Assembly (NCBI RefSeq): GCF_963853765.1
Contig: NC_088854.1
Location: 23,312,001 to 23,376,000 of the forward strand
Direction: 5' to 3'
Source: Magallana gigas
Taxonomy: Eukaryota
Length of the DNA stretch: 64,000 bases
Shown: in pieces, positions 2,646 through 62,036 of the stretch
Position numbering within the stretch: the stretch's first letter is position 1
Layout: each line of letters opens with the position of its first letter
The notes under the pieces: model-generated
What the model was told of the DNA's origin: nothing
What the model saw: only the letters and a program-made list of their open reading frames with translations
Databases searched by the model: none
Translations under genes and position numbers: made by a program

Positions 2646-2845
2646 AGCAAACAAGACAGGACACGGCATTATCTGCATAACATAGATTTATCTAGAACTA
2701 CACACATGCGCACTTGACACAAATACAAGTATGGTAACACGTACACAACATAATTCGATATACATGTATTACAATTAATCAACAGAGCGTGAAACTAAAT
2801 AACTAACACTTAGTATTCCGAATATAGACCTTGATAAAAACTCAC

Positions 2846-31785: not shown

Positions 31786-34193
31786 AATATCAATTCTGGC
31801 TCAAAAATATTAAGTAGGTAAACAATATATGATCGACTTGATTAGAGATTAATTTGTTTTAAAACACAAAAGACTAAGGTTCAGAGTTTTAGTGTGTATT
31901 TTATCGAATTCTCAAGCTACGTCATGCGATCTTACATATGCCATTGGTTATCCTAAACGAAATCATTTATATGCTCATTTTCGGATCTTCTGTTATGCAA
32001 TGCAATTACATTGTAAGTTATTGTACCAATTATATATATATATATATATACCATGATTCATATTTTATTTTACTTTTTGTACACTTGAAATATTCAATGT
32101 ATTAAAAACATAGTGTCGATAAAATGCAAAACTCTGCCGAATTAATTTGTCAGTGTCGATGTGGTATTTTTGCTCCCGCTAAAGTTGTACATGTTGTTTT
32201 GTAAAAATCCATATAATTAAAGCATACGATAAACCATCTCTACCACTGTTGTTCTGTGTCTCGCCTAGCGGTGGGTTTTATACCTTTAAAAATTTAGTAT
32301 CACATGACGAATAATAATTTTCATAGAAGAATATATTTTCTAAGGTTATTTTGAAAATTCCTTAAGCTTTTCGACAAATTTCACAGAAATTATACGTATT
32401 CCTAAAGGATACCGGTATTAGTATTTCCTTCAGGAATTTTATTCCGGTAGTTCTCCAGTAGGAAATTAAAACGGCCAAAGGGAGGCTTCTACATAAATAA
32501 TGTAAGCGCTTTTATCTTTTTAGACTCATTACTAAAGGTTTCACTGTTTTGAAGAGTAATATATTGAACAAATAGCGGTAGTCAAATATAAAAGGGAAAT
32601 ACTGTGTACTTAAAAAATTTTGTCAGCCTAAACATGATTTAAAATCCATTGCATGTACTTGGGGGTTACAAATCTACATGAAATCTGCCGTCTTTTTTTT
32701 TTCTCATTAGAAAATTTATGCTATGTTGATTCTATTTGATATTATATTGATGACATATCTTAATACAGACTCTGACTTCATCTATCTTAGTTTAAAAAAT
32801 AGTGTACTTGCCAAAGGGTTTCTTTATTGACAATTGTAAAAAAAAAAAGTGATTTTTCAAATTTTTCTGAGAGGGCATATGGAGTGCGAGATTACTTTAT
32901 CAGAAATTGATCAAATACAACACAGAAGATTTTCTACATATTTAATGACAAGGAAGGATAGATTGTGAAAAAAAAATTTAGAAACAAACACTAGACTTCA
33001 TTTATCTTGAATTGTAGAGGAATTACACTACCATGAAGCAAATGTTTCAGTCAGTTCTACAGTGTGTCTAAAATTTAATGCAAATTATAATGGTAAATTT
33101 TTATACATTGAACCGTTGACTGCAAACGGCAGAAACCAACTGGAAGTGCTGCATCCATGAAAAGCAAAATACAGGTAAAGCAATCAATAACCCAAATTCA
33201 TATGGCAATCAAACACACTCTTTTAAAATATGTATGGTGTTGGTACAATCATTGTAAGACATACAGAGGAAGCCCAAAATAATATGCGAGTTTAAAGTCT
33301 AGAAAATGAGAGAGTTATATATCTTTTAGCAGTCCAACTTTTAGCAGAAATAAATCAATTTAGGAGACTACATAGTCAGAATAACCTATCAGATTTACGT
33401 TAAATGTTAAGTATGGTATGTTTGGCGTTTAACTATTAGAAAGAGAAAAAAATTCAAATATTCAACGTTTACTATTTTTTATGTAGGGTTCTTCATTTTA
33501 AGAAGACTTATGCAATCAGATATGTTTACGACCATTCATTCCTATAATTTCGCATACAGAATACGTTGATGAAATCATGAATGCTCTACCGTATAATTTT
33601 TTATGATATATGTAAGTACAAATATATGAATCATAATTTCAAGGATTAAAGGATTTTTTAAAACCGTTTTTTTTTTCAATCTGTATATCCACACAAAAGT
33701 TCAAATGTGTTTTATTAAAATTACCGTAAAACACGCTTATAACGCAGTGAAAGGGATGAGCGACATTTCTTCCTTATAAACGTAATGCCTTATACCCGTT
33801 AGCTTCACAATATGTTTAAAAACTACGGAAATAAAAAATACTTCCATATAAGCATTCGTTCATTTTAAGCGTGCTCCCTATAAGCATGTTTTACTGTAAT
33901 TATTTAGGCTACAAATATTTGAATAGGAACCAACAAACTCTCAAGAGAAGGTTCAGCGTTAATAATTAAATTACTAAAACATAAAGGCCTCAGAGCGCAA
34001 TTAAAACTCCTCAGAAATCCAATAACTAAATGGTGCATAAAAGAAATTTGAAATTAAAAATTGATCGTGAGAGAGTACACGAAGTTGAAGTCTGTATTTA
34101 TTCTCCGTTGTTTTTAATCGGTACAGATGTTTTCCAGTGATTGTTGTCAGATGTATCTGCTATTTTGACAATTTACATTCATTCTTCAGTAAG

Positions 34194-35359
34194 ATGAATC
34201 AACAATGTATTGCATACTTCATCCTTATAGTTGGAATATTCACTACAGGTAAATGTCAATTTATTAGCATTGTATGATATGTATTGATTTTACTTACATT
34301 CAGTACGTTTTTTTTTTACCTGGGCAGTTTTCCCTATCCATGTTGTCACTTTGAAATGCAAAGCTGGTTTTGAAAACATCGCAAAGTGGTGTTTTTCAAT
34401 TCATCTTGAGAGCAAATCTTTGTCCAAGTCACGTGAGATTTGCGAGAAGACTGGCGGCAACATGGTTCTACTTGATGAACATATGAAACTAAATTTGCTG
34501 CGGAAATATATTCAAGGTAAATTGGTAAATTAGTTTTACTCCATTGAGACTTTTCTTATTTCCCCGTTTTCATCCTGTAGTTTTATGCCTGTGTTGTTTT
34601 CAAGTTATTTATTACATGAAGCAAATGTATACTTTTGTCATAGACTGATATCTTGTTGCTTTTTTTTTTTTTTTTTACAGAAAAGAGACTTATTCATAAA
34701 CTATACGTGAAAAATAAGGAGGTATTTCAAAATTTCTTTGTTTTCAGTTGATTCGAAAAACTTCGAGTTAAATGTTTTAAATATATAAAAACTTAAGGAA
34801 ATATAGAATTATACGTTGTGTATTACATAAAATTCAATATAATATGGTTAATGCTTTTGTCTTTTATTTTTAAGGCATTGCTGAAATCATATCAAGAACT
34901 TCAGGATCTCTTGACATATCATAAAAAGTGTAAGTGTATGTAAAGGGAGCTGAGAAAGTATTTTGTAATCTTCTTAAATAATCATTGTTTTAAAAATAAT
35001 TTTGACCTTTTAGATTGCAAGTCGTACAAGAAAAACAAGCTTAAAAAACCAACAGAGGAATTTTATGTTCCAAACGCAAAGGTAGAAATTGTGTGCATAA
35101 TATTTTTACGTAACATAAAATGAAAAAGCAGATTTCAACGATACCAGAGGTCTGTCTTTAGTAAGATAGCTTTTAATGTAAAACAAATTTTAGTTTTTAA
35201 ACACTTTACTTCTTAATGATATTTTGTTCTTTGTGCTAACATGCATATTTCATAATATAGTCCCTCAGACTTATGTAAGGAAATCCGATTGTGTTTGTAT
35301 AGAATGCACTTGTTTATAAAGAATGCACTTCGGTTGCTTAAAGTCGAATTTATTAAATT

Positions 35360-35407
<48 letters not shown>

Positions 35408-36993
35408 AATAAATCATATTCATTCATTCATTATTAGTTACCCGTTTTCTTTGATGAAAATGAGCGTGCGCGATTGACAACCCCACCTGGCTATTTTATT
35501 GCCAACTCTTCAATACCCAGTGCTGGATACGGAGCATGGACAATGACTGGAGTCAAAAAGTATACAGTACTTGGGGAATATGAGGGAGAGGAACATAAGA
35601 AAGAAGGGAACCAGCCTTACTCCTGGGTTGTGCGTATCTATTTCTGTATACATTTTACTTCATTTTTCCCAATGAAAGATTATAAATGAATCATAAGCAG
35701 ACAGTTATGGTTCGTATACAAAGATGTAATAATAAGTACGTTACATTACGTAAAATGTACATTATTTTTAAGTTTTGTGATCTCTTGAACTCGCTAATGG
35801 CGTTTCCAAAGTTACTTTGATAAAAATATTAGCTAGTTAGTATAATTTTGTGTTGACATGATACCTTGAAGTTTTAAAATAATGTACTTATACAGCGATC
35901 GATATTGCTCATTTGATGCAGAGAGTTTAAGAACAGTTTCATAAAATGTTTTAATATTGTTTTGATTTTTTTAATTATTTCGGGATTTTTTTTAATTTTC
36001 AAGCTTTACTTTTCAAGAACATTAAATTCAGAATTTTTTAGCTTACTCAGTAACTTATTTAAATTCATTTTATTTTTCAAGTCCTAGACCACCAAGCTTG
36101 ATGCTGGTTATTTATGTGAAATGAATCAGTAGGAATAAAGAGAGGGATATGTCAACGATATTGTTCTTTGAAACATTTGATAAAACTATCTATATACATA
36201 GTTTTACAACTTAAATATAACCAATATCATAAACGAATACGTATTAATACAGTTTTCTACTGTTTTAGTCGAAATTTTGCTCCTTAATTAAATAATATGG
36301 TTTTGATCATGCTAACAATGTAACTTGTTTGATAATGTTACTTGTCGTTAACAAGTATTTTTTCATCTACAATGCATCTAATATACAAGATATATGAAGA
36401 TAAAGAAAGGAAAAAGAAACATTATATAGACGCATCTTCTCCCGCCAAAAGTAACTGGTTGCGGTATGTCAACTGTGCAAGGAATGTGCGCGAAGAAAAC
36501 GTGTTTTCATTTGGTTGTGACGGCCTAGTATTTTATATGACGACAAAAAACGTGGAGCCCAACACAGAGTTACTGACCTGGTATGGAGAAAATGATGGAC
36601 GTTTCTTGGGAATAAAGAGATTGCATCCAGGTTGTTATCTACATGTAATTAAAAAAAAATCAGACACATATATACATGCATAAACGCAATGTTTTTATTT
36701 ATTTAATCCATTTCTTCTATGTTTCAGCAAGCGAAATGAATCTGAAATCAGCTTCTCACATCCGTCTGAGTTATATGCCTAAAGATTCATTAAAAGATTA
36801 TCTTAAATATCATCAAAACTGGTTTTCAAATAAATATGATAAAAAGAGCAACAAAACATATCATGGAATTATAGACACTTATGAGGATGGGACGTGGACA
36901 ATGCAGCGGGAAGGAAATTACACGTATTATACTGGGGAACAGGGACTTCTAGTTCCATTTGTGTGTGAACATGAACCACTGGAAAAAGAATAA
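34194..36993 (+). CDS. Signal peptide + split C-type lectin-like domain with inserted PR/SET domain, copy A, 8 exons, 368 aa
   Basis: Exons 34194-34248 (MNQQCIAYFILIVGIFTT), 34328-34516 (VFPIHVVTLKCKAGFENIAKWCF..EICEKTGGNMVLLD..YIQ), 34681-34721, 34875-34929, 35014-35081 (YCKSYK..FYVPNAK), 35438-35629 (RARLTTPPG..SSIPSAGYGAW..LGEYEG..YSWV), 36390-36630 (YIDASSPAKSNWLRYVNCARN..VFYMT..ELLTWYG), 36728-36993 (..HIRL..NW..WTM..PFVCE). All GT-AG, phases 1,1,0,1,0,0,1; 1107 nt, frame closed. Confidence 0.92.
35361..35402. repeat. (CT)n microsatellite in intron 5 of copy A
   Basis: About 20 CT units with one interruption. Confidence 0.95.
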
Positions 36994-38801
36994 GATCAAA
37001 TATGTTATTTAAATTAGTGCAATGGTTTATGTAGATAAATACCTGTGTAAAGTATTAGATATACATACAATATAACTTAGATAAAAGGATTGTTATTCCT
37101 ATCTCAATCTGATTATTTTTATGGTGAAGGATATTACAAGGTACGTTCTCATGTGCCCCTCGTTAATATCTTGCGTGCTTAACTATTGATAATCATTTAC
37201 CCTCTGATGGCGGTCGTTTTATTTTCTTATGATACAAATCAGTCACTATTATATCAATATCTTGGGTACAAATAATCAATATCTTCTAGATTTTTCATTT
37301 ATGTAACGTTCTGAATGTTTATCTATTGAACGTGGTTCTAATTTCTAAAACTTTTACATTTTACCGACAGACTGACACTGAGACATGAAAAAAATATAAT
37401 TGCGAAAGTTGACAATTAAAAACAAAGTAAAAAAAAATATTTCGGCTGTGGCTCAAAGTATCGATTATAATCACTAAAATATTTAATGGGGGAGTCAATA
37501 AATAATGTCCAAATTTTAGTGAGTTAACCTCTAGAAAATCGTTAACCAAAATACTGTCAATCATACACGAAAGACTACAAGGTAACAATTTGGAATTTTA
37601 TCAGCCAAGAGGAGAAAAGAGCCTTAGTTCGCTGTAATGTTTATATATTTGCACTTTCGAAGGTGATATACAGTGAGTGAAGGGAAAGATCGATTTTAAC
37701 TACGGACTTCTGACATTCCTGTTCGTCTGGTAGGTACAATGTATGTCACTTTTTTTAGGGAGTGGTGTCATTTTTTGAATATGTGTTGCAAATTAATATA
37801 GAATGGCTAGTATTAGCAACAGATGCCAGAGAATTTTTCACATTGTTGTTGCAATATCTATTTGATGTGGCATTAACTTCTCAAAAGAAAAATGCAGATT
37901 GGGGTGTCAAAGGGAATATATTAAACGACAATTAAATAATATAGCTGAGAAGTGGATTTTATTTAGCTTTATATTTCATCGTTTGTGAACACACCCTCTT
38001 TTGTCATTGCGGCACAGTGATTTTAAACTAGTTCGGCATATATTTGATTAATTAGTGCTGATGAAGAAAATTATATCCGATTCCTCCTGTCAATAATACT
38101 GTCGCACATCAAATTTCACTTGCAATTCAAAAAAAAGTTCTGGAGATGAAAAAAGATGCGTTTTCAAACATTAATATAACCATTCAAATCAATATCAGTG
38201 GAGTCAACAAATAAATTTTTAGTAAGTCTAAAATCTAGTTACCTCGATAAAATCGTTAACTGAAATAAAAAGGGTTCGTATTTCTTTACTGGTTAACAAT
38301 TCTTTTGTGGTATTTTTAACGATCAGCCAAACATTGTTGTCAGCTGTCGAGTAATGTATTCAAGACTGGTGAGCACTATGTTATGTTTACGTTTGTTTAA
38401 TTTTCCTGTATAAAGCGTTTTTACGGATTAATTTCTTCTTGTTTGCTCTTTATGAGCACAAATAAACGGTATCTAGTGTTCGTCACATACTAAAACATTA
38501 TAAACAACATAAATGGAAAACTTAAAATAAAAAATATTTAGCTAACATCATTACCATGCTTCGAACCGTAAGAAATATGCATATTTCATGGCCAACAAAA
38601 AAATAGGTGGTTAAATTGTATTTTTTTTAGTATACATCGTTGTATTCAATTTATTTGTTCTTAAAAAGTGATTCAACGAAATAGACTTAAAAGTTAAAGT
38701 CTTTAGATATACAAATCCCAGTTTCAATGCAACTGTTTTACCGTTAAGAAATATCATTGTAAGAATCGGCTTTATTCTTTTATACAGGATCTTCAGATAA
38801 A

Positions 38802-40014
38802 ATGACACAGCAATCATCTGCATTATATATCTTTATAGTTACAATCGTCACCTCAGGTAAATATATTTTTTTTTCATTTTTTGAAATGTAATCAAACCAA
38901 AATGAATTAAGTTTGTTAATTACTTTTACAGTTTTCACGATCAATGTTGCCAATGTGAAATGCAAAGCCGGTTTTGAAAACGTCGGACAATGGTGTTTTT
39001 CATTTTATCTTGAGAGCAAATCCTTGTCAGACTCCATTGAGATTTGCACAAAAGCCGGTGGCAACATGGTTCTAATGGACGAATACAGGAAGATAGAGNN
39101 NNNNNNNNNNNNNNNNNNNNNNNNNNNNNNNNNNNNNNNNNNNNNNNNNNNNNNNNNNNNNNNNNNNNNNNNNNNNNNNNNNNNNNNNNNNNNNNNNNNN
39201 NNNNNNNNNNNNNNNNNNNNNNNNNNNNNNNNNNNNNNNNNNNAAATTCGTACTCAAAAAATTACTTATCTTATACGGTTTAGTTTTCATTTCGACTTTT
39301 AGATCGATCAGAATGTGATCCTTATACGTAAAAAAAGAAAGAAAATTAAATGCTTAATGTTACAGTGTGCACTAATACATGGACAAAGGGTTAGATATTA
39401 TGACGAATATCGAATACATGTATCGATAATATCCTTTTAAGATGAAGAATTGATTCCAGTAGGTCTAGTTAAAGTAAACTAAATGGTTACTAATTTTCTT
39501 TACACACTGTCGATGGTTAGATATTGAGATACTGATTTTTTTTTTCTCTTCTGTTTCATTTGTTCATTTTTTTAACTACAGCAACAAAATGCCTATTTAC
39601 TTATTTAAATTAATAAAAAACTTTATATGTTCAATTCTTAAATATTTTTCTCCATGATGTTTTTTTTTCCAAATGCTTACTAATGTATACTAATGAATTG
39701 TCACTTAATAATTTTTTGTAGAAAAAAGACTCATACATAAACTGACTGTGCAAAACAGAGAGGTAATTTGAATGTAACAGTATACTATTGTATATATATA
39801 TATATCACAAATCACAAATTATTTGCCCATTATTATGGTTGATAATATTCATAAGATTATGTATATGACTTTCCAAATTAATGTTTTTATATGCATTAAC
39901 TTTTACACGACTGGTTTTTTTTCTGTTAAATGAATTTCTAACTAATTTTAAAGGCATTGATAAAATCTTATCAGGAAATTCGTGAAGTAACAACATATCA
40001 GGAAAATTGTGAGT

Positions 40015-40091
<77 letters not shown>

Positions 40092-41845
40092 CACAGCTTT
40101 CAATTTTTGTCTCTTTTATGACTGTTAATATCACTTTGACCAAAAATATATAGTAACATATATTTAGATTGCAACACCTACAAGACAAATAGATTGTTAA
40201 AACCTGCAGAAGAATTTTACATCCCAAACGCCAAGGTAGAATTCATTCTATTTTTAAACAAATTACAGGTGGAAAAAAACTAAATTCGTAATTTCAAAGG
40301 TATAAAAAAATCATGACACATCAATTGTTTGATATGAAAAAAAGCATTGATACCAAGTTTGGTTGCTTAGAACTTGCTTAAATAGTTTGAAATAAAACAA
40401 TATTTTCTGAATGAAATTTGACCCCATTTGACATCACCATAGAAACACATAGAGAACACTTCTGTAAAGTTTGATAGAAAAAAATTTAAATTACAGCTTC
40501 CGATTAACTTTAATGGAAATGGACGTGCGAGATTGACAACTCCAAGTGGATTTTTCATTGCAAAGTCATCAATTCCTAGCGCCGGATACGGAGCATGGAC
40601 TAAGACTAAAGTCCGGAAGTATACAGTCTTAGGAGAATATGAGGGAGAGGAACATAAGATAGAAGGGAATAGTCCATATTCCTGGGTTGTATGTACATAT
40701 ATAAGTATTTATATTGTATGCATTTCGGGTCAGGTTTTGAATGCTTTAGAGATCTGATAATATTTCGGTTTATGTGGTTAATCGAGCCTTATAGGATTAT
40801 GAACATTTATTAACTTTATTATGTTATAGGTTTAAGATTAACAAAATATCGATATTAATTAATATTATTAAGATGCTTAAGCATTGGCTTAAACTGACAC
40901 GTTAACTTCATTTATCCATCTTTAACAAGGCATTAATAACATTATTTCTCTTTTTTAAATTTGTAAAGACTTGATACAGTTTAAATCGGTGCTTTGAGTT
41001 TTATTATGTTATTGATTGTTAATCCATTTTTCAAATGTGCAGATATATGAAGATAAGAAAAAGGAAAAGAGGCATTTTATAGATGCTTCCTCTCCCGCCA
41101 AAAGTAACTGGTTGCGGTATATCAACTGCGCAAGAAATATGTGGGAAGAAAACGTGTACTCCTTTGTATGTGATAACTTAGTATTTTACATGACAACAAA
41201 AGAGGTGGAACCCAACACAGAGTTACTGACATGGTATGGACGGAACGACGGATTGATGCTAGGGATTACAAAATTACATCCAGGTAGAATGTGTTTTCAT
41301 AAATATAAGTAGGCACAACTTCTCGTGGTTATAGAGTTCAAGGTTTCAAGGATACTTAATTTCGTGGCTAATGATCCTATCAATACACTATTGTTTCCGT
41401 TATAATTGCTCTTCAATGGACATTTATTTCGTGGGTTAACTAAGTAAAATCTACGCAAAAATATAATATTAAATGAAAACTGACGAAGCCACAGCATCTG
41501 TGACAATATATGCACAACGAAAACTTATTTAATCGATCACAAACACATGATATTATGTGTCATTTTTTTCTCATTTCAGCGAGTGAGTTGGACTTGAATT
41601 CAACATTTTATATTCGATTGAGTTATATGCCTCAGGATTTAAAAAAAAACGATCTCAAATACCACCAAAACTGGTTTTCAAATAAACACGATATAAAGGA
41701 CAATAAAATACAGTATGGCATTCTTGACTCATATCACGATGGAGCGTGGAAAATTCAGCGGGAAAATAATTATACGTATTATACAGGTGAAGACGGATTT
41801 TCAGTTCCATTTGTATGTGAACATCAACCACTTGATGTTAAGTAA
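38802..41845 (+). CDS. CTLD-PR/SET chimeric gene, copy B, 8 exons (end of exon 2 hidden in a gap)
   Basis: Exons 38802-38856, 38932-(gap at 39099), 39722-39762, 39954-40008, 40168-40235, 40497-40688, 41043-41283, 41580-41845. Every fully visible exon has the same length and phase as in copy A; no stops in visible exons. Confidence 0.88.
39099..39243. other. Assembly gap (145 N)
   Basis: Run of N. Confidence 1.
40019..40088. repeat. (TA)n microsatellite in intron 4 of copy B
   Basis: About 35 TA units. Confidence 0.98.
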
Positions 41846-44533: not shown

Positions 44534-47500
44534 ATGGGAACTTTCTCTGAAAATTTAATCTTCATTGCTGGTAATATAATGCTGTTGTAAATTTTTGTCA
44601 GTCAGAATTGTTGCTGGTTAAATGATGATGCACAGTTTTAGTTTGTTTCAGTTTTAGTCAACTTTATAAGAAATACACTTAGTGAAGATGAATTTATACG
44701 ACTTGGAATATGGTGCTTTTCTTTTCACCTGGAATATGAACCACGTCATACATCCGAGAAAATATGTTCAGAAAAAGGCGGTCAATTGATTATGTTGGAT
44801 TCAGATAAGAAAATAGCAGTTGTTAGGAAATATATAAAAGGTAATTTTATGTAAATACAAAATATGTTTATAGGTCGGTATATATATGATAAACACACAA
44901 AAAAGGAAACGAATTCAAATTTCAAAAATATTGTGAAATCAGTTTAAGAAAAGTGTGTTTTTTTAATTTTTGTTAAAGATATCAGCATGTCTACATTTCC
45001 CTTCCATCAAAAAAGCGCTATTCTCACTCTGTCAGACATCAACAGTCACAAATATTTCGTGCATTGACAAAACAGGTATCCTTTGTGTGAGAATTGTTTT
45101 TGAATTCCAATCAGTTTGAAATCAAAAGTTTTTGAAACTTGTGTGTGCAAAGAAATCTTACGAATTTTGATACAGTCTTGATGTGGTCATAAATAAGAAC
45201 ATTCTACAAGTCCTCGTTTTGGAATTTTGCCAAATCAGAAGATGGCCATATTAAACATGTACATCATCTTTCTCTCCAATAACTTGTATTTTGTATTATG
45301 GTGCACATCATGGTCAGTGACTTCAATGAGAGACATTTTATTTCATTTCCCAAGCACCATATGACGGTGCCTAAAACAGGTATATACCAAGACATTCGAT
45401 ATCAGAAAAAAACCATCGGTTTGAATATGAAACAAGTATTTTCATTATACTTTCATGTTAAATACTGAAATCTGATTGGTTTAGACCCAGTTGATAATCC
45501 TTTCTATTACCCTCAGCGTTAGCAATACACTTAGCAACGGGTAACACAACGAAATATTACATGTGCGTACATTATGCGCGTAGGTTTGCCGTAGAATTCG
45601 CGTCATTTCTATGTAAATACAATAAATTATCTCTTAAATTAAAACATTCACTATAATAAAATAAATAGTGCCTGTTTTGGAAGGTAACAGTTGAAATTGA
45701 CACCCCTCGATAAACATTGTCAACCTTCGCTTCGCGTCGGTTGACAATCGTTTTCTCGGGGTGTCAATTTCACTTGTTACCCTCCCAAATAGGCACTATT
45801 TATATGATACTGCATAGAGGATGTGAATGTCAAAGTAAGTTTACTGCTCAGTAAAAAAAACCCCTTTAACTTAATAACCAATCAAATTTAACCTTTGATC
45901 GAAAAGAAATTGCTTTTTATAATGACTTCTTTATCCATTACGTAGTACTTTACTCATGATGTTTCTTTTGATAGCTAGAGGATTCACATCAGAGCTGAAT
46001 CTACAAAAAAGACAGGTACAAACGCAATATCATCATTGTAGTTATGGTTTTCTGTTATGTTGATTTATTACTTATTCAAGACTACAGTTTATCTTGGGTT
46101 GATTTGTAGATTTTACTGAATTCATATCACAGAATTCAAGACACGGTTAACTATGGAGAAAGGTGTTAGTATATCTGATAATTTCTTTATCCCCCACCTC
46201 TGTCTAATAAAATAATTCAATCAAAGTGTTTTATCATTGGTAAACTAGATTAAGAGTGTACAATAATATATAAGGTAAAATTAATGCGTTGAATTTTATT
46301 TTTGCAGTTTGTCGTATGTACAAGAATTATAGAATGGCAAAACCAAGCAAAGTTACTTATATCCCAAACAAAAAGGTATTACTCTGTAAGAGTAAACATG
46401 ATAAAAATGTTGTTTTTTATTTATAGAATATGGAGAATACCTACTTTCATAAAATAAGCAGTATTGTTTTATAATTATATTGTATAACTAGAAATATGTC
46501 TTTACTTAACAATCATTCATAGCTCCGGGTAAATTTTCTTGAAAATCAACGAGCAAACTTGACAACGCCAACTGGTTTTGTCGTTGAACCTTCCTCTATT
46601 ACTGGTGCGGGATTGGGAGCCTGGGCAAAGAAAAGGGTCCGCATGTATACAGTTATAGGGGAATATGAAGGAGAAGAACATAGGAATGAAGAATTCATTT
46701 CACATTATCAATGGACCGTACGTGTCATTCAGAGGCTGGGTGGTCGTGGCCATTATAAGACAATATAAATCTCCTTAAAAAGAAGAGCTCTGTATAAAAA
46801 TATAGGAAAACATTCCAACTTTACAGTTAAAATTTAAGGATTTTTTATTCACGAAAAAAAAACAGTTTACAGCTTGAAAAATCATTCTTTTTTAATTTAA
46901 GGTAGATCTGTTGTTACTTTTGTTGAGCACCCAGCCTCCTAAAATAAAATTTAATCAGATATACTTAAACCATATACGAACCAATGATCAGTAGTATAAC
47001 TGATTGAAATAGCAAGTAAGTGTTGCAGGTCTTTCGAATTAGCTATTCATATTTTCAAATACTGCATTATTTTACGGTTTAGTTGAGACGGTTATCTTAT
47101 TTGTTAAGGCATTTGAGCTTCGAAAAATTTAAGAGAGGGTATGTAAAGAATAATGAATTACCAATCTTGGCCTGAAATTAAAATTGCATTTTGAAAGATT
47201 TTTCGTGCAAAGAAAAGTATCATTGTTGTTTTTAAACATTTAGATCCCTGAGATTGAGCAGGCCATGAGCTATTACATAGACGCAGCTTCTCCCGCCAAA
47301 AGTAACTGGCTCCGGTACGTCAACTGCGCCAGAAATGTGCATGAAGAAAATTTGAAGCCAATTATTTGTGACGGTTTAGTATTTTACATGACGTCAAAGG
47401 ACGTAGAACCAGACACAGAGCTGCTGGTTTGGTATGGTACAGAGTATGGAAAACATCTCGGAATCACGCGCATGCATCCTAGTAAGTATGGTCGGTTATT

Positions 47501-48124
47501 TTCAAATATCTCTTTTTTTTATAAGGATTTTAAGGTAGATTATGCCACACTCACAACTATAATCAGTTATGATTTGATGGTCATTATACATGTACGTATA
47601 TTCATTACGGCACTATACACTAAGGAGAAAAAAAAACTGCGTTCTTGGCTATATTTTGTAGAGGGTTTTTAATGCGACAATGATAAACAAAAATGCACTG
47701 TAGCCCATCTTTTACGTTTGGAAAGTAAAGTGTTCAACAATTTTTTCATGAATTTCTAATAGAATTATGTAATATGTGCTATGCCGTGTGCATGTATATC
47801 AAATGTTATTTGTAAATTTTATAATATTTCATAGGCGATGAATTAGATTTGAAGTCCACTTTCTATATCCGGGTATATTACTCACCTCAAGCTCCAGACT
47901 CGACGTTGTATTCCTTCAACAGTCATATTTCAAACAGACCGAACAGCTCGGAGACAAACAATGGAATGTTGAATAAAACATACTTTGGGATGCTGGATTC
48001 CTACCGTGGTGGAATGTGGAAATTGGTTCTTGAGAAAAATTATTCTTATTTTAGTGACGATGGGCTTCATTTTCCATTTATCTGCGAATATAACCAAAAC
48101 ATATGTCTCAATTCTCATAATTAG
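44534..48124 (+). CDS. CTLD-PR/SET chimeric gene, copy C, 8 exons, 370 aa
   Basis: Exons 44534-44570, 44652-44840 (..IWCFSF..KICSEKGGQLIMLD), 45975-46015, 46110-46164, 46308-46375, 46523-46717, 47244-47481, 47835-48124 (..FYIRV..WKL..FPFICE). Same phases as copy A; 1113 nt, frame closed. The start codon is less certain than in A, D and E. Confidence 0.88.
45661..45803. repeat. Long imperfect palindrome (~65-bp arms) in intron 2 of copy C, probably part of a non-autonomous element
   Basis: ATAAATAGTGCCT..GGTAAC..GAAATTGACACCCC..ATTGTCAACC / loop TTCGCTTCGCGTC / GGTTGACAAT..GGGGTGTCAATTTC..GTTACC..AGGCACTATTTAT. Confidence 0.85.
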
Positions 48125-51026: not shown

Positions 51027-53715
51027 ATGATCAACAAATTTTGTTTTTTCGTTTTCATTTTAGGTAAATATTATGATGGATAGAAAGCTTGTTTTAATGT
51101 TATTAAAATTGTCAACTGCATATAAGTGTATTTTATCTAATTTTACAGTTTTACCATTTTCTGTCAAAAGTGAAAAGTGCAAAGTAGGCTATGATAGTGC
51201 GGCAGAATGGTGTTTTATGCTTCAACTGCAAGGAAAATCTGCGCTCGGGGCAGCAGAGATTTGTAATAAAACTGGTGGCAGAATAGCCTTACTGGACAGC
51301 TATAAAAAGATAGAGATTCTTCGGACCTATATTAACGGTAAAGTATTAAATTCTTTAATGCTTATTTATTAGTTTGTTTGTTTGGGTTTTAGTTTTGTTT
51401 TGGGTGGGGTTTTTTTATTATTTTGTTTTTCATTTTCATTAGTTTTGAGGGCGGGTAGATTGTTTGTTTTTTATTGAATATAATAAGCTAACGATTTTTA
51501 CTAAGAGTTTTGAGTTATATTCGTGTAATAATTCAATGGACGTTTATACATCACTAGTGATTAAAGGGGAAATCCCTGAATTTAGTTTGACTTTGATTCA
51601 AGTATAAATTATATGTATAATGTTTAAGTTTTAAAAATTATAATTCATAAATGATATTTAGTGAAATTTATTAAAATGTACTCGTAAATTTTAATTCCTG
51701 ACAGTTTAATCAATGTGCTTTAACTCTTCAACGTAAATTTTTAACTCTTATCTCTGTATTTAGAGAAAAAAGAATTTTTACTGGCTTCGTCGATTAAAAC
51801 CCAGGAGGTACGTACTAAATCGTTTCTATGTGTAGCACGAGCGAGTATTAACATTGAGTAATTTGAATGATTTTTAAGATAACCCACTCCTGAATGTTGT
51901 TGAATCATGAATTTTTTGAGAAGTGTATCATTGAAATATTTAGACAAAACATAGTTAAAAAATACAAATAAAATGGGGGGGGGGGGGGGGGGGGTCAGTA
52001 TTCATCCCTCAGAATTATGGCCCGTTTAATTTGACCTTTTGCACTTAAAACGGAATGGAATTTCAGCCTGATTAGGATTAGTTGTCAGTATTTTTGATTA
52101 GGCAAACTTATTTCTTCAAATATCGTTTTCAATTATGCACAATGGTCACACTGAATAGATATATCATAAAATATATCATAAACTTTTTTGTGATCTTTTT
52201 GCAATATCTTTAATAGTTACAATTTGAATATCAAGAATTTTATAAGATATATACAGTTTGCCAAGATATGTATTCAGTATCATTTTGACATAATAAAACA
52301 TGGGGGTCAGTGATGTCAAATTTTAGGTATAGGGCTTCAAACGTAAAATTCTAGAAAAATTTCCTAAAAAAATTCAGATATTTAATATAAATTTGCGTGA
52401 TTTTATGCCAAACGTATATCACTCTCTCAAGATTTAATTTTGTACATGTCACACAGAACCTATAGAATATGTTACAAACCCATCAAATGTTTAAAATGTT
52501 GATAATGAATAAATTTATAAAGAAAGGAAAAGTATTTTGAACATCTATAAAATTGCTTATTTCTGTCATTTTTGTCTAAAAAACCTTCCACACGAAAAAA
52601 TAGTTCCCCAGAAAATGTGTTTGTTTCTTTCATTCAAATAGATTTTCTTTATGAATGCTATGTAATTATAAGCTATTAATCTTTCTGTGAATATTAAATA
52701 AATGAAATCATTTTCATTTTAAATATAATGATCATCTGCGTAATGAAATCAAAACGTGAGGAGTGAGATACCGTAATCAAAGTTTTTATCTATTTTTTCA
52801 GCAGGACTTAATGATGTCATACCGTAGAATAAGAGACATGAGTGATTATGCAGATAGATGTACGTATTTGTAATATTTGAAATCCCAACTTACATATACA
52901 AATGCTAGCATAATGTAATCCATCTAGCAATCTACCAATTCAAATGTATCATATTGTGAGTGTCACCCTGCATTTTTTTATTTATCTATTTGCAGATTGT
53001 AAGACTTACAAAAGGTTTAAGCTGTTCTGGTCAACAAGGAAGTTGTATATACCAAACAGGGAGGTTTGTAAGAATAAATCGTATCATTAAATGAACAATG
53101 CCTATTTGCATCTTGAGTTTTGATTTGTTACTTCTGTTGAATCATTGTTTATTAGTAGTAAATTCCTGTATAGCTTCCTATCCAATTTGATGCAAACGAA
53201 CGTGCAAATAGAACAACACCGGCTGGGTTCATCATTAAAACCTCGTCTATTCCTGGTGCGGGACTTGGGGCATGGACAACATCAAAAGTTCCCATGTTTA
53301 CAGTTCTGGGGGAGTATGAAGGAGAGGAGCACAAGCACGAGGGGGATACGTCGTACTCCTGGATTGTAAGTTGGCTGGGGCATTGACTCCTGGTTAGTGT
53401 GGATAATTTTCATCAAAATATAGTTGTCTTAGTTTTGTTTTTTGATTGCACGTTTGCATAACTGATTTTAGAAATTCAAACTGAAAAGTACACGTATGTG
53501 CATATGCACACGTAAGCACATTTACATCATTTTACAATTTGATATTAAAGTGTTGATCTTAGATATCTCTTTTTTTCTTTCAATTCCACTTTTTTTATCC
53601 TGAACGAAATGTAAGTTTTCACTTGAAGATATAACTAAATGATGATGGTTTTATATATGAACACCCACAATAGTACAGGAGCATCGCCGCTTTACCACTT
53701 CGTATTTATCATGAG

Positions 53716-53803
<88 letters not shown>

Positions 53804-54577
53804 CTAGTAGCTTCCTGCAGGAATGTCGTAATTTTAAAATGAAAGTTTGTATTTTGTGATATTCTATTTCGTAAGTATATGCTAATTGGTAATTTAAATT
53901 AACGTTGAGTATATGACGACCAGAATTCAGTGATTTATTGGTGTTATTTGTCTCATACTAAACAGGTATTTGAGGATGACGAAGAGGAACAAATGCACTT
54001 TATTGACGCGTCTTCTCTCGCCAAAAGTAACTGGCTACGTTACGTCAATTGTGCTAGAAATGTGCATGAAGAAAATGTAAAGCCAATAATATGTGATGGG
54101 TTAGTATTTTACATGGCGACCAAAGATGTCGGGCCCAACACAGAACTATTGACTTGGTATGGAGAAAACGATGGACGGTCGCTTGGAATCACTCGCAGAC
54201 ACCCAGGTACATGTATTATAGGACAATACGTTTATAGCTGTATATAACCTGAACAACAAAAGAAAACTCTTTTATTTAAGTTGACAGTTGCATTTCTAAG
54301 AAACGTAGATTTTTCCTCTTAAAAAATAAAATTTATGATCCCCCGCCTTCTTTTTCTCATTGTAGCTCGTGATTTGGAACTCCGATCAACCAATTATGTG
54401 CGAGTAAAATACAAAAATCCATGTAACCCGGATAATCACTTTGTCCTCTTCGATCCGTTTAACAAGAAAGGGCGGCATATTCAACGAGAGTATGACTACT
54501 CTTATTACACTGGTACAGCGGGACTTCTTCTACCGTTTGTGTGTGAACATAGCCCTGTAGATACCGGTATACACTGA
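51027..54577 (+). CDS. CTLD-PR/SET chimeric gene, copy D, 8 exons, 345 aa
   Basis: Exons 51027-51063 and 51149-51337 (MINKFCFFVFILVLPFSVKS-EKCKVGY..EWCF..EICNKTGG), 51764-51807, 52805-52859, 52996-53063, 53174-53365, 53966-54206, 54366-54577 (short CTLD C-half ending PFVCE). 1038 nt, frame closed. Confidence 0.9.
53719..53802. repeat. (TA)n microsatellite in intron 6 of copy D
   Basis: About 42 TA units. Confidence 0.98.
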
Positions 54578-58221: not shown

Positions 58222-61200
58222 ATGAAGACCTTAAATTGTATACTTTTTTACTTTCTTATCAAAATAATAGGTAGGGCTTGGTTTTTGCAAATCCTATTTT
58301 ACGAGTCCTTCGAAAATTATGTTCATTCTTATGCATTGCTGTTTTAAACAGAAGGTAGAAGATGCAAGAAAGGTTTTGACAATATCGGGAACTGGTGTTT
58401 CTCTTTTCATCCGAATGGTGCATCTTTTGTAAAATCTAGTGAGATATGTGGCGAGATCGGAGGCGATTTGGTGGTATTAGATTCACTAGAGAAGGAAGCC
58501 ATGCTGACAGACTATATAGAAGGTTGGTCAAGCAACGAAGCATTTTGACGTAAAATAATTTATTCATTCTTATTTTCATTTTACTTAAAAATTACATAAT
58601 TTTTCTTATTTATTCATCATAATTCGTTACTTGTTAGACAGGTAAATATTTCAGTAAGAAGACTGGATGGTCAACAAATTAACCATCAGATCTGAACTTT
58701 TGAGATATGCTTTTTTTTTGCTGTAGATTTTTAGCTCAACGGGAAATTCGGGTTCACGGCTAGACAATCCGAATTTTCCGAGGAGCTACAAGTATGCAGC
58801 TATTTTTTGTTTACATACAAACTATTAATGATTTAGTAGGGAAAAAATCCATATTTCTTAAATTTAAAATATGGGTACTTTTCTGTATTATCAAGTATTT
58901 TTAATTGAGTTATTCTTCTAAAGGACATCGTTAAAGTCTAAAAATGGCCACGACCATCGAGTCCTCTTATTTATTTGTAAGATCTATATGCCCATATTTA
59001 TACTGCAAACATTGTTTGATTTGTAGCTAAAGGCTTCACATACAAGACGACAGTTTCTAATCGAGAGGTGCTGAATCAGTTTCGTTGGTGGTATTGAACT
59101 GTAATGAAAATGAATGTCAAATTATTTAAAAAACCATATGGTACATTATGTATTTTATTTTACTTCTTTCTCTTTTAATTTCAGGATTTGTTAAAATCTC
59201 ACCATAGATTAAAAGTTGCTGATAAACACGCTGAAAGATGTACGTACACAATAAAATGAATCGATTTCAGAAATCGATAACTCATGTCTCCATTCCCTGT
59301 ATTCGATTAAACAATGGTTGAGAAAAGTCTTGTTATAATTAGTTAAATGATATAAGAAATCATGTATTTTTACTTTTTAATTTCTTAGATTGTGACTTCT
59401 ATAAAAAGTTTAGATGGATTAAACCTACAAAAGAATTGTATATTCCCAATGCTGAGGTAATATTGTAAAAGAGTGAAGCTAATGTACTTTTTTTCAAAAT
59501 TCTATTTCATTTCTCAATGAAATTTCTCGTAGGGGTCTGGACTGGGTTTTACAAAAGAACTTACGACAAAGTCACATGGAATGATCTTTGACGAACAAAA
59601 TATATATAAAACCATTTATTTACAACTATTTTGATTTCCATTATTAAATTTTACAGCCAGAATAATAAAATAATGGTTAGTTTGGGATTAAATAGCATTT
59701 AAAAAAAGTTCTTTTGTAAAACGCAGCCCGAGTCGATTAACTAATGTCCTTTTATGTGAACTGTGTCTATAACGATTTGTCAACTCTGAATTGATAAACA
59801 ATACCTATCCAGAAAAATGGTGTACCCTATATGCAATATTATGTGTGTAAATGACTAAATTCAACAGCTAATACATTTTTCATTAATTATCAAAATATTT
59901 AAATCCAAGTGATATGCAAATCTCTGATATATGTCCAATTGATCTGCAAAACAACTTCGAATTCCTATCTTAAAAACTGAAGGAGGGGTTATCCGTACAC
60001 CAGGGGTAGCCCATTTGCAGTGCTCTGAGAAAAAATGACTAAGTTTAACATCTGGTATTTTTTTTTTCATAAATTATCAAAAATCAAAATCCAAGAAGCA
60101 TGCATGTTTCTGATATATGTCAAATTGATTTGCAAAACATCATGATCACCTTCCTATCTTGAAAATTGTCGGAGGAGTTATCCGTACAATACTGGAGTAA
60201 CCTATATGCAATATTCTGCAAGAAAATTTTCAAGTTTAACAGCTGGTATTTTTTCATAAATATATCAAAAATCATAATTCAAGTAATATACACATCTCTG
60301 ATATACATGTGTATGTACAATTGATCAGCAAAACAACAACTTCCTATCTTGAAAACTGTAGGAGGGGTTATCCGTACAATAGGGATGCCCTTTTAGCAGC
60401 CGCCCGCCCGCCATTTTTACCATTTCATTTATTTTCCTTTGGAAAGCCCGGTTAATAAAATTATTTTAACTGACCTTCATTGTTAAATATTTTCTTGAAA
60501 TGAATTTTACAACTCTGTTATCTTCAAACATAGATCCCAGTGGATTTCGATGAGCTACAGAGGGCCAATTTGACCACGCCCCCTGGTTTCTCGGTCAAGC
60601 TCTCATCTATTCCGGGAGCAGGCCTTGGGGCGTGGACTTCGACACACCTTCCCATCAACAATGTGTTAGGGGTGTATGATGGGGAGGAGTTCATAGACGA
60701 CGGGGAATATATGTATGGATGGATGGTAAGTATCTACATTGTATATGAGGGGCGGCTTGGTGCTGTCCATCTAATTCTTCCTCTCTTCACAAACCGCAGT
60801 GTCTTGTTCTAAACAGCTTTGAAACATAATTATTGACGAAGAGAAATGGTTTTTTTTTTCAAACATGACCTTCAGACTTATTCTAGTAATGGAAAGTTCC
60901 CCAAAAGAATATGTATGGGAAGCTCTTTCAGAATCTTCTTTTTAAGATTGATGCAATTTGATTGACTGTAGATACCATTTCAAACCTTGATCTCTTGATA
61001 ATATGTAGTTTCAAGTTTGTTCACAGCATAACAACCGGTCGACAAATAAAGCGCATTTTTTTTCAAATATTCTTCTCAGAAACTGTGATGTTACAATTAT
61101 TAATCAAGCATTGCCAGAATCGTATGGACTGAATTTCATTCAATAAAGGGTCACTTGAGGCGTTATTTATCCACATTTACATGCTAGGGAAAAATACAGG

Positions 61201-62036
61201 AAAAAATGTTACCCAAAGATAACCCCCGGTTTTTCAAAGGAATTTCCCAAAAATTAATTTATAAACTGTTACTCATTTGACCGATAATACCAATGCAGTG
61301 TATTCTGGGTTATACGTCTCTTCGTATCAAAACCCAGGAAACTTAGTACCTTGAAACTCACATTAAAAAATATTTTGTAGCTAGACAACGTTGATGGTGA
61401 ATTGGCAACCCATTTTGTGGACGCAGGTTCTCCCGCCAAAGGCAACTGGTTAAGATACGTCAACTGCGCCAGAAATGAGCAGGAAGAAAATATCAATGTC
61501 GTCTTTTGTGAAGATTTAGTCTTTTACATTACATCAAAAGACATTGCGCCAAATACTGAGTTGCTTATGTGGTACGGTACTTGGTATGGAAATCTTCTTG
61601 GAATCAAAAGGGTGCACCCAGGTTATTCATTTTGAAGAATTGGTAAAATGGTGTATAAGTCTTAATGTTTAGTGAAATTTTGCCGAATGTGCACTTAATT
61701 GATAAGATCAATCGTTTCTTTGATTAATAAACAGATGACGATTTGGACCTTGATGACGTAATCTACATCCGGGTCAGCAGCTTGAGAAAAACAAGAGACG
61801 GAGACTACTGTTTCCATGACAACACTACTGTGACGTACACAAACTGGATTCCTAAAAGGTTCAATAAAACTCGAGAGCGAGAGTACTGGCAACATGTTTA
61901 CGATCCCTTTGGCTTGTTACTCGCATATTACGACGGAAAATGGAAGTGGGTGTTCGAAAAGGATTACTCTTACTTCACTGGTGATACTGGTCTACTACTC
62001 CCATTTGTTTGTGAAGATAGGTCACATATTAATTGA
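58222..62036 (+). CDS. CTLD-PR/SET chimeric gene, copy E, 8 exons, 372 aa
   Basis: Exons 58222-58270 and 58352-58522 (MKTLNCILFYFLIKIIEG-RRCKKGFDNIGNWCF..EICGEIGGDLVVLDS), 59027-59067, 59185-59239, 59389-59456, 60534-60725, 61381-61621, 61735-62036 (YIRVSSLRKTRDGDYCFHDNTTVTYTNWIP..DGKWKW..LPFVCE). 1119 nt, frame closed. The C-half is the most canonical CTLD of the five. Confidence 0.92.
59790..60420. repeat. ~190-bp tandem array (3+ units) ending in CCGCCCGCCCGCC, in intron 5 of copy E; resembles satellite-carrying Helentron/HINE cores of bivalves
   Basis: CTATCTT(A/G)AAAA(C/T)TG..GGAGG(G/A)GTTATCCGTACA recurs with GGAGG at 59982, 60171 and 60361. Confidence 0.75.

What the first reader, a model, noticed from the sequence alone, without database searches (positions are those of the whole stretch)
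34516..36728. The SET insert is a phase-1/phase-1 symmetric exon cassette inside the lectin domain
Seen: exon 2 ends in phase 1 and exon 8 starts in phase 1 in every copy where visible (A 34516/36728, C 44840/47835, D 51337/54366, E 58522/61735). Splicing exon 2 straight to exon 8 would therefore give an in-frame, uninterrupted CTLD. Inference: exons 3-7 entered an intron of an ancestral lectin gene by exon shuffling, and skipping could still give lectin-only and lectin+SET isoforms from one locus. The phase-0 intron after YSW(V/I) matches my recollection of the PRDM9 SET intron, which needs checking.
Basis: partly seen in the sequence, partly recalled or inferred. Interest (0 to 1): 0.7.

Follow-up and report, generated by a model that had tools for sequence, protein, structure and literature searches.

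The report
SET-domain exon cassette inside oyster lectin
In a Pacific-oyster gene family, five exons encoding a PRDM9-type methyltransferase domain sit as an in-frame block in the middle of a C-type-lectin-like domain, a clean case of exon shuffling, but there is no sign that the block is ever spliced out.

Summary
In copies A, C, D and E, exon 2 ends and exon 8 starts in phase 1 at exactly the stated coordinates. Copy B's exon 8 and three paralogues elsewhere in the genome agree. Exons 3-7 total exactly 597 nt in A, B, C and E.

RNA-derived contigs from four studies confirm every junction of copy A. An AlphaFold model folds the exon 2 and exon 8 parts into one C-type-lectin-like domain, with a PRDM9-like PR/SET domain nested between helix alpha2 and strand beta2.

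The exon-shuffling origin is well supported:
- 25 of 28 cassette-free oyster lectin-domain genes have their best splice donor in phase 1 within a few codons of this site.
- The cassette keeps a phase-0 intron (YSWV|IY) that the same genome's PRDM9-like gene and two other PRDM genes share.

The isoform idea is not supported. No exon 2-exon 8 junction appeared in the contigs, and no lectin-only protein appeared in searches of billions of predicted proteins. No cassette-free close paralogue exists.

The family has about 16-17 loci in Magallana gigas and was found only in oysters. It carries automatic names such as "PRDM9/PRDM7-like". The scan's first readers flagged the same architecture on another piece of this genome.

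The parts
34194..34248 (+). Copy A exon 1: start codon and hydrophobic N-terminal signal-like segment; ends in phase 1
   Evidence: exon 1-2 junction in RNA-like contigs
34328..34516 (+). Copy A exon 2: N-terminal half of the C-type-lectin-like domain (beta0, beta1, alpha1, alpha2); phase 1 at both ends
   Evidence: family profile A2 hits CTLD N-halves in the PDB; model
34681..36630 (+). Copy A cassette, exons 3-7 (34681-34721, 34875-34929, 35014-35081, 35438-35629, 36390-36630). 597 nt, phase 1 in and phase 1 out. Encodes linker helix, pre-SET segment and PR/SET domain
   Evidence: Pfam PRDM2_PR 5e-23 on exon 7; PRDM9 SET structures; all junctions in contigs
35629..36390 (+). Copy A intron 6: phase-0 intron after YSWV, inside the PR/SET domain. 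Shared in position with the oyster PRDM9-like gene and two other PRDM genes
   Evidence: junction 35629->36390 in two runs
36728..36993 (+). Copy A exon 8: C-terminal half of the lectin-like domain (beta2 to beta5, ends FVCE...) plus stop; starts in phase 1
   Evidence: exon 7-8 junction in all four runs; model
39722..41283 (+). Copy B cassette, exons 3-7 (597 nt). Exon 8 is 41580-41845 and starts in phase 1. The exon 2 end is hidden in the N-run 39099-39243
44840..47835 (+). Copy C: exon 2 ends at 44840 (phase 1). Cassette 45975-47481 (597 nt). Exon 8 starts at 47835 (phase 1)
   Evidence: exon order matches NCBI protein P0056
51337..54366 (+). Copy D: exon 2 ends at 51337 (phase 1). Exons 4-7 lie at 52805-54206; exon 3 was not located with confidence. 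Exon 8 starts at 54366 (phase 1)
   Evidence: spliced exon 4-8 protein of a D-type allele in run assemblies, P0059
58522..61735 (+). Copy E: exon 2 ends at 58522 (phase 1). Cassette 59027-61621 (597 nt). Exon 8 starts at 61735 (phase 1)

Best explanation
Exons 3-7 are a constitutively included, phase 1-1 symmetric block of 597 nt. The block encodes a linker helix, a pre-SET segment and a PRDM9-type PR/SET domain. It sits in what was the phase-1 intron between helix alpha2 and strand beta2 of a three-exon gene for a secreted C-type-lectin-like protein (signal exon, N-half exon, C-half exon).

The most likely history is a DNA-level copy of part of a PRDM9-like gene, introns included, landing in that intron in an ancestor of oysters. 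It could be spliced in without breaking the frame because its outer phases matched the host intron. The result is a nested-domain protein: the two lectin halves still fold together, and the SET domain loops out between alpha2 and beta2.

The gene then multiplied to about 16-17 loci in Magallana gigas. Both parts are under purifying selection.

Shown: the phases, the splicing of copy A, the homology of both parts, the host-type and donor-type introns, and the restriction of hits to oysters. Inferred: the direction and mechanism of the insertion, secretion, and enzymatic activity.
For: - Gene models and phases.
- Every junction of copy A appears in contigs of four RNA-like runs; single contigs carry exon 2-3-4-5-6.
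- Exon 7 matches Pfam PRDM2_PR at 5e-23. Full-length relatives reach about 1e-27.
- The AF2 model (pLDDT 79, pTM 0.74) matches PRDM9 SET: Foldseek 3e-15 at 34% identity and Z 16.8 over model residues 106-268. It also matches whole CTLDs at Z 10-11.6, with 98-124 aligned residues spanning model residues about 27-365.
- The exon 2 profile hits CTLD N-halves in the PDB.
- Host intron: the best donor is in phase 1 in 25 of 28 cassette-free CTLD N-half exons. Fifteen lie one codon upstream and one lies at the identical position. L008 and L012 splice in frame to a C-half-plus-stop exon, and a SET-deleted family profile aligns to L008 across the junction.
- Donor introns: phase-0 AWQ|IYK in the PRDM9-like gene on contig C9, which is the nearest non-family SET in the genome (44% identity, 8e-17). 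The same site occurs in two other PRDM genes. The introns before SET exon 1 (phase 0) and after SET exon 2 (phase 1) of that gene have the same phases as the cassette's, 2 and 9 codons away.
- dN/dS for A versus B is 0.24 for the lectin halves and 0.15 for SET.
- The three tyrosines that align with PRDM9's catalytic ones are invariant in 13 family members.
- All hits come from Magallana, Crassostrea, Saccostrea and Ostrea.
Against: - No cassette-free orthologue or close paralogue was found, so the ancestral host gene is inferred, not seen.
- The C-terminal lectin half is only weakly lectin-like by sequence: the best PDB hit has E 0.44, and Pfam Lectin_C stays below its cut-off. The single-CTLD claim therefore rests on a predicted structure made from a shallow 24-row alignment.
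- Host-type introns are mostly one codon off rather than identical. Their donors were chosen by a consensus score, not by RNA.
- I could not resolve the 5' outer boundary of the cassette in the donor gene.
- Exons 3-4 have no detectable relative.
- The PRDM9-like gene's exon ends were read from sequence alone.
Confidence: 0.75

Rival explanations
1. The cassette is a regulated alternative block. Skipping exons 3-7 yields a plain secreted lectin from the same locus, alongside the lectin+SET form.
For: The join is in frame in A, C, D and E. About ten residues would remain between alpha2 and beta2 according to the model's secondary structure. NCBI does predict other isoforms in this family: copy C without exon 6 (P0056), and forms that start at an internal Met of exon 2 (P0042, P0045).
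Against: No 34516->36728 junction appeared in contigs of four runs from four studies, while contigs do run exon 2 to exon 3. No protein joining the halves appeared in the 27 hits of the exon 8 profile search or among proteins of 63-199 aa, which all start in read-through of intron 7. The SET part is under stronger constraint than the lectin part.
Confidence: 0.08
2. The SET domain entered by another route, such as insertion into an exon or an unequal fusion. Introns 2 and 7 arose or shifted later, so the 1-1 symmetry is a consequence of frame-keeping rather than a trace of intronic insertion.
For: Symmetry is needed for any viable product, with a prior of 1/3. The host-type introns are mostly one codon away, not identical. 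No ancestral host gene is in hand.
Against: A phase-1 intron at this site is the rule in cassette-free oyster CTLD genes (25 of 28). The cassette keeps PRDM-type internal introns, which excludes a cDNA origin and fits a genomic segment landing in an existing intron.
Confidence: 0.1
3. The order of events was the reverse. A PRDM9-derived SET gene separately captured a lectin N-half exon upstream and a lectin C-half exon downstream.
For: None directly. It would give the same present-day structure.
Against: It needs two independent captures of complementary halves of one fold, in the right order and phases. The two halves pair in the model. They keep the cysteines expected of the CTLD disulfide that links alpha1 to beta5.
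Confidence: 0.04
4. The arrangement is a gene-model artefact: a lectin gene and a SET gene wrongly joined.
For: Pfam alone sees only the SET domain in full-length proteins.
Against: Spliced contigs link exon 2 through exon 6, exon 6 to 7, and exon 7 to 8. The same structure is found in 8 genes examined. NCBI and assembled transcripts give the same protein.
Confidence: 0.02

Closest known systems
PRDM9 / PRDM7 PR/SET histone-lysine methyltransferase domain
   Same: Best sequence and structure match: phmmer 1e-24 against PDB 4c1q, Foldseek 3e-15 at 34% identity, and Z 16.8 including the pre-SET segment. The motifs GxYEG, YSW, NW(L/M)RYVNCAR, FY and ELLxWYG are kept, with the three tyrosines invariant in the family. 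The phase-0 intron after the YSW motif is shared with the oyster PRDM9-like gene.
   Different: There is no C2H2 zinc-finger array, no KRAB and no SSXRD. The pre-SET zinc-knuckle cysteines are mostly gone. The domain is nested inside a lectin-like fold behind a signal-like N-terminus, so the protein is unlikely to be a chromatin-targeted PRDM. The automatic names 'PRDM9', 'PRDM7-like' and 'set-17-like' describe only the insert.
Long-form C-type lectin-like domain (CTLD), e.g. clam SPL-2, LLT1, mannose-receptor CRD-4
   Same: The N-half profile matches CTLDs. The modelled fold matches whole CTLDs. The N-terminal cysteine pair and the alpha1-beta5 cysteine pair are kept. The gene layout, with a phase-1 intron between alpha2 and beta2, matches other oyster CTLD genes.
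   Different: It is interrupted by a 199-residue insert. The second core disulfide is missing, as are the EPN/QPD and WND calcium/sugar motifs. Pfam Lectin_C stays below its cut-off. 'Lectin' is therefore a statement about fold, not about sugar binding.
Exon shuffling of symmetric class 1-1 modules into phase-1 introns (Patthy's rule for animal extracellular proteins; from general knowledge)
   Same: A 1-1 symmetric block sits in a phase-1 intron of a gene for a secreted protein whose own domain exon is also 1-1.
   Different: The shuffled module is a multi-exon piece of a nuclear enzyme gene, not a typical extracellular module. It landed inside a domain rather than between domains.
Nested (inserted) domains in proteins
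   Same: One domain is continuous, and the other is split in sequence but whole in space.
   Different: I found no described case of a SET domain nested in a CTLD. Paper searches gave nothing. AlphaFold DB clusters gave only SET-part matches outside this genome.

Membership tests
PR/SET domain (PRDM-type SET) | Sequence match to the PR-domain profile above the curated cut-off | tested here: met
   PF21549 PRDM2_PR scores 81.5 bits on exon 7 alone (cut-off 27) and 84-97 bits on full-length relatives
PR/SET domain (PRDM-type SET) | SET fold with the residues that line the PRDM9 active site (three tyrosines, NCAR and ELLxWYG motifs) | tested here: met
   Model versus PRDM9 structures; residue alignment to 4c1q and 6nm4; Y185, Y250 and Y266 invariant in alignment A3. 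Which residues are catalytic is taken from my general knowledge of PRDM9
PR/SET domain (PRDM-type SET) | Lysine methyltransferase activity | not testable with these tools
   Needs an enzyme assay
PRDM protein family (PR domain plus C2H2 zinc fingers) | C2H2 zinc-finger array after the PR domain | tested here: not met
   The protein ends with the lectin C-half. Pfam finds no zinc finger. The genome's PRDM9-like gene on contig C9 does have an array
C-type lectin-like domain | Pfam Lectin_C at or above the gathering score | tested here: not met
   20.6-20.8 bits against a cut-off of 22.6, and only profile positions 3-59 of 107. Single exons give no hit
C-type lectin-like domain | CTLD fold formed by the two flanks together | tested here: met
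   VIA-align Z 10-11.6 to many CTLDs, 98-124 aligned residues, model range about 27-365. The N-half profile matches PDB CTLDs at 3e-9. This is a predicted model only
C-type lectin-like domain | Conserved cysteines of the alpha1-beta5 disulfide and the long-form N-terminal pair | tested here: met
   C58 nearly invariant, C361 invariant, and the CxxGF...WCF pair is present. The second core pair is absent
Calcium-dependent carbohydrate-recognition domain (true C-type lectin) | EPN/QPD and WND motifs of the sugar and calcium site | tested here: not met
   In the alignment to MRC2 the family has no QPD/EPN or WND equivalent. Copy D lacks most of the long-loop region
Exon-shuffled symmetric module | Equal intron phases on both sides of the block, in all members | tested here: met
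   Phase 1/1 in A, C, D, E and in L002-L004. Cassette of 597 nt in A, B, C and E
Exon-shuffled symmetric module | Relatives of the host without the module have an intron of that phase at that site | tested here: met
   25 of 28 cassette-free CTLD N-half exons have their best donor in phase 1, at -2 to +13 nt (22 of them at -2, +1 or +7). L008 and L012 splice in frame. Donors were inferred from sequence
Exon-shuffled symmetric module | The module keeps introns of its donor gene family | tested here: met
   Phase-0 intron after the YSW motif in the PRDM9-like gene and two other PRDM genes of the same genome
Exon-shuffled symmetric module | An identifiable module-free orthologue of the host gene | tested here: not met
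   None found in the genome, in 1.84 billion representative proteins or among short proteins
Alternatively spliced cassette | Transcripts that join exon 2 directly to exon 8 | tested here: inconclusive
   Absent from contigs of four runs and from protein collections. Contigs cannot exclude rare forms

The most novel reading that the evidence does not exclude
Oysters have evolved a secreted (or secretory-pathway) lysine methyltransferase. A PRDM9-type SET domain with an intact active site is carried on a lectin-like scaffold behind a signal peptide. It would act on non-chromatin targets, such as microbial surfaces or extracellular histones, as part of the expanded oyster immune repertoire.
Probability: 0.12. 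Interest if true: 0.85.

Novelty: new variant of a known kind. Interest (0 to 1): 0.55.

Why it matters
Both sides of this exon-shuffling event can still be read in one genome. The host-type phase-1 intron is visible in many plain lectin-domain genes, and the donor-type internal intron is visible in the PRDM genes. The event placed a multi-exon piece of a nuclear chromatin enzyme inside an extracellular-type fold, not between domains, and the product was kept and multiplied only in oysters.

It also corrects the public annotation. The genes named PRDM9, PRDM7-like or set-17-like in oyster genomes are not recombination-hotspot PRDM9 orthologues. They are lectin-like proteins with a nested SET domain. 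That matters for anyone counting PRDM9 genes across animals.

Whether a SET domain with a preserved active site works in the secretory pathway is an open and testable question.

Tried and rejected
- Pfam on single exons 2, 6 and 8 gave nothing.
- The exon 8 profile against PDB sequences gave only a non-significant CTLD hit (E 0.44).
- The 30 loose letters in front of exon 2 in one contig looked like an alternative 5' exon. They are a dispersed inverted-repeat element with 89 near-identical copies, so I rejected that reading.
- I looked for the pre-SET exon of the PRDM9-like gene on contig C9 to fix the donor's 5' phase. No convincing exon turned up.
- KRAB and SSXRD profile searches of the genome found nothing, and the tool's own controls show that this blank is uninformative. 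I therefore call the C9 gene 'PRDM9-like', not an orthologue.
- The ESM Atlas feature search gave no usable hit.
- AlphaFold DB clusters gave only SET-part matches apart from one masked entry from this genome or a near copy.
- Paper searches for this architecture returned nothing relevant. One apparent hit concerned immunoglobulin 'I-set' domains.
- Copy D's exon 3 could not be placed with confidence.
- dN/dS is usable only for A versus B. Other pairs are saturated.
- Copy B's exon 2 end lies in a masked N-run and was left alone.
Full report
WHAT IS THERE. The right half of the window holds five tandem genes on the + strand: A 34194-36993, B 38802-41845, C about 44693-48124, D about 51145-54577 and E about 58360-62036. 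I rebuilt copy A exon by exon. It has eight GT-AG exons and a 369-codon open frame, and the introns have phases 1,1,0,1,0,0,1.

Copy B's exon 2 end lies in the masked N-run 39099-39243, and I left it alone. Exons 3-7 add up to exactly 597 nt in A, B, C and E, and the frame is open throughout. Three paralogues fetched from other chromosomes have the same two phases.

IS THE GENE MODEL REAL? Yes. I laid contigs of four RNA-like runs from four studies on 34000-37300. They carry every predicted junction. Single contigs run exon 2-3-4-5-6, two runs show 35629->36390, and all four show 36630->36728. Spliced junctions show that these contigs derive from RNA. Some contigs lie in intron 6, which points to unspliced RNA or DNA carry-over.

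WHAT THE PARTS ENCODE.
- Exon 7 alone matches the Pfam PR domain at 5e-23.
- A near-identical allele of copy A from the protein collection (P0057) matches PRDM9 SET crystal-structure sequences at 1e-24. It keeps GxYEG, YSW, NW(L/M)RYVNCAR, FY and ELLxWYG.
- The three tyrosines that I know as PRDM9's catalytic ones are invariant across 13 family members.
- A profile of exon 2 from seven genes hits the N-terminal halves of solved C-type-lectin-like domains (MRC2 3e-9, CD69 3e-8).
- Exon 8 is much weaker by sequence. Its best PDB hit is a mannose-receptor-2 CTLD at E 0.44, in the right register.
- Pfam Lectin_C stays just below its cut-off and covers only the first half.

An AlphaFold model built on a 24-row family alignment (pLDDT 79, pTM 0.74) settles the architecture as far as a prediction can. 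Residues 106-268 superpose on PRDM9 SET (Z 16.8). A long list of complete CTLDs, including a clam lectin, superposes with 98-124 aligned residues over model residues about 27-365 (Z 10-11.6). In the model, the exon 2 and exon 8 parts therefore make one CTLD, and the PR/SET domain loops out between alpha2 and beta2.

The sugar and calcium motifs (EPN/QPD, WND) and the second core disulfide are absent. 'Lectin' here names a fold, not a shown activity.

HOST SIDE OF THE SHUFFLING CLAIM. The exon 2 profile finds 14 family exons in the genome (E 1e-17 or better). After a gap, it finds 38 ordinary CTLD exons (E about 1e-6 and weaker). I fetched 28 of these and scored every GT near the end of the alpha2 helix with a simple consensus donor matrix, whose weights come from general knowledge.

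The top donor is in phase 1 in 25 of 28, against 38 of 91 for all GT candidates. Fifteen lie one codon upstream of the family's site, one lies at the identical position, and six lie two codons downstream.

Two of these genes (L008, L012) splice in frame from that donor to a single exon that carries the rest of the domain and the stop. That is the same layout as exon 2 / exon 8. A family profile with the SET part cut out aligns to L008 straight across the junction, although most of the score comes from the N-half.

A phase-1 intron between alpha2 and beta2 is thus the normal state of oyster CTLD genes.

DONOR SIDE. The nearest non-family PR/SET exon in the genome lies on contig C9 (44% identity, 8e-17). 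It belongs to a gene with a post-SET zinc finger and a C2H2 array downstream. Its SET domain is split by a phase-0 intron at AWQ|IYK, the same place as YSWV|IYE in the family. Two further PRDM genes have it too, at MWEV|IFE. It is therefore an old PR-domain intron, not a PRDM9 peculiarity.

In the C9 gene the introns before and after the two SET exons have phases 0 and 1, as in the cassette, but lie 2 and 9 codons away. I read these ends from sequence only. The model's residues 106-140 (exons 4-5) superpose on PRDM9's pre-SET segment. I could not find the matching upstream exon in the C9 gene, so the donor's 5' phase is open.

Retained introns rule out a cDNA origin for the insert.

ISOFORMS. 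The join of exon 2 to exon 8 is in frame, but I found no sign that it is used.
- There is no 34516->36728 junction in the four runs.
- An exon 8 profile search of 1.84 billion representative proteins returned only 27 hits. The hits above E about 1e-7 are all oyster family members or fragments, and the few weaker ones are unrelated proteins. Wherever sequence precedes the exon 8 part, it is SET or read-through of intron 7.
- A search restricted to proteins of 63-199 aa found six, all starting in intron 7.

NCBI does predict other variants. One is copy C without exon 6, a 0-0 exon whose loss removes half the SET domain. Others start at an internal Met of exon 2. Contigs drop rare forms, so skipping is unsupported rather than excluded.

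NO CASSETTE-FREE SISTER. Every exon 8-like match in the genome sits just downstream of a SET exon. The family has 5 loci here, about 10 in three clusters on C1 (one with stops), and 1 on C5. All database hits come from Magallana, Crassostrea, Saccostrea and Ostrea. AlphaFold DB clusters show only SET-part matches elsewhere. The event therefore predates the split of these oyster genera, and the ancestral host gene is not in hand.

SELECTION AND LIKELY WORKING. Between A and B, dN/dS is 0.24 for the lectin halves and 0.15 for the SET exons, at dS about 0.9. Other pairs are saturated. The N-terminus is hydrophobic, and in several relatives it looks like a classical signal peptide (judged by eye, no predictor was run).

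My reading is that the cassette is constitutive and that the product is a nested-domain protein entering the secretory pathway. What the SET domain does there is unknown. Its preserved active-site motifs argue against a dead domain.

VERDICT. The exon-shuffling interpretation is well supported from both sides, though the ancestor is missing and the symmetry alone is weak evidence. The PRDM intron match is confirmed within this genome. The isoform idea is unsupported.

The architecture appears undescribed in the searchable literature, although the genes are in public annotation under misleading PRDM names. Other first-stage notes of this scan flagged the same architecture here and on another piece of the genome. 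I used them as leads only.

Noticed in passing
window 46523-46717 (copy C exon 6): NCBI protein XP_065931769.1 ('PR domain zinc finger protein 1 isoform X2', P0056) is copy C with exon 6 left out. Exon 5 joins exon 7, both phase 0. This would remove the N-terminal half of the SET domain while keeping the frame.
   Followed up: partly
window 54366-54577 (copy D exon 8): Copy D's lectin C-half is about 30 residues shorter than the others. It lacks the long-loop region with the NW motif. A D-type spliced protein is present in run assemblies (P0059), so the short form is expressed.
   Followed up: partly
window 34328 (start of copy A exon 2), run X5: One contig carries 30 foreign letters directly in front of exon 2. 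The 30-mer occurs 89 times in the genome with at most 2 mismatches, often as inverted pairs about 800 nt apart. That pattern fits the ends of a small DNA transposon, so this is probably an assembly chimera rather than an alternative first exon.
   Followed up: yes
window 38934-39095 and proteins P0042, P0045: Public 305-aa 'isoform X2 / PRDM7' proteins of the copy B type start at an internal Met in exon 2. They lack the signal-like segment and the first part of the lectin N-half. This would give a non-secreted form with a broken lectin fold.
   Followed up: no
window 35600-36147 (copy A intron 6): Contigs of three of the four RNA-like runs lie inside intron 6. This could be intron retention, unspliced RNA or DNA carry-over.
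   Followed up: no
window 36913, run X4: One contig lacks a single base in the coding part of exon 8, at low depth (3.7). It could be an error, an allele or a paralogue.
   Followed up: no
window 1635-2678 (-) and 6537-6956 (-): Transposon remnants: open frames with reverse-transcriptase and gag-aspartyl-protease matches, and a DDE_Tnp_4 (Harbinger-type) transposase fragment.
   Followed up: partly
window 35350-35402 and 40010-40060: A (CT)n microsatellite in copy A intron 5 and a (TA)n run just after copy B exon 4.
   Followed up: no
G000:C9:42921000-42930999 (L001, - strand): A PRDM9-like gene with two PR/SET exons, a post-SET zinc finger and a C2H2 array about 5 kb downstream. KRAB and SSXRD were not detected, but that search was uninformative. 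This gene, not the window's genes, is the candidate true PRDM9 relative in this oyster.
   Followed up: partly
G000:C1:539717-539926: One family SET exon on C1 carries two stop codons (TGA, TAA), so it is probably a pseudogene copy.
   Followed up: no
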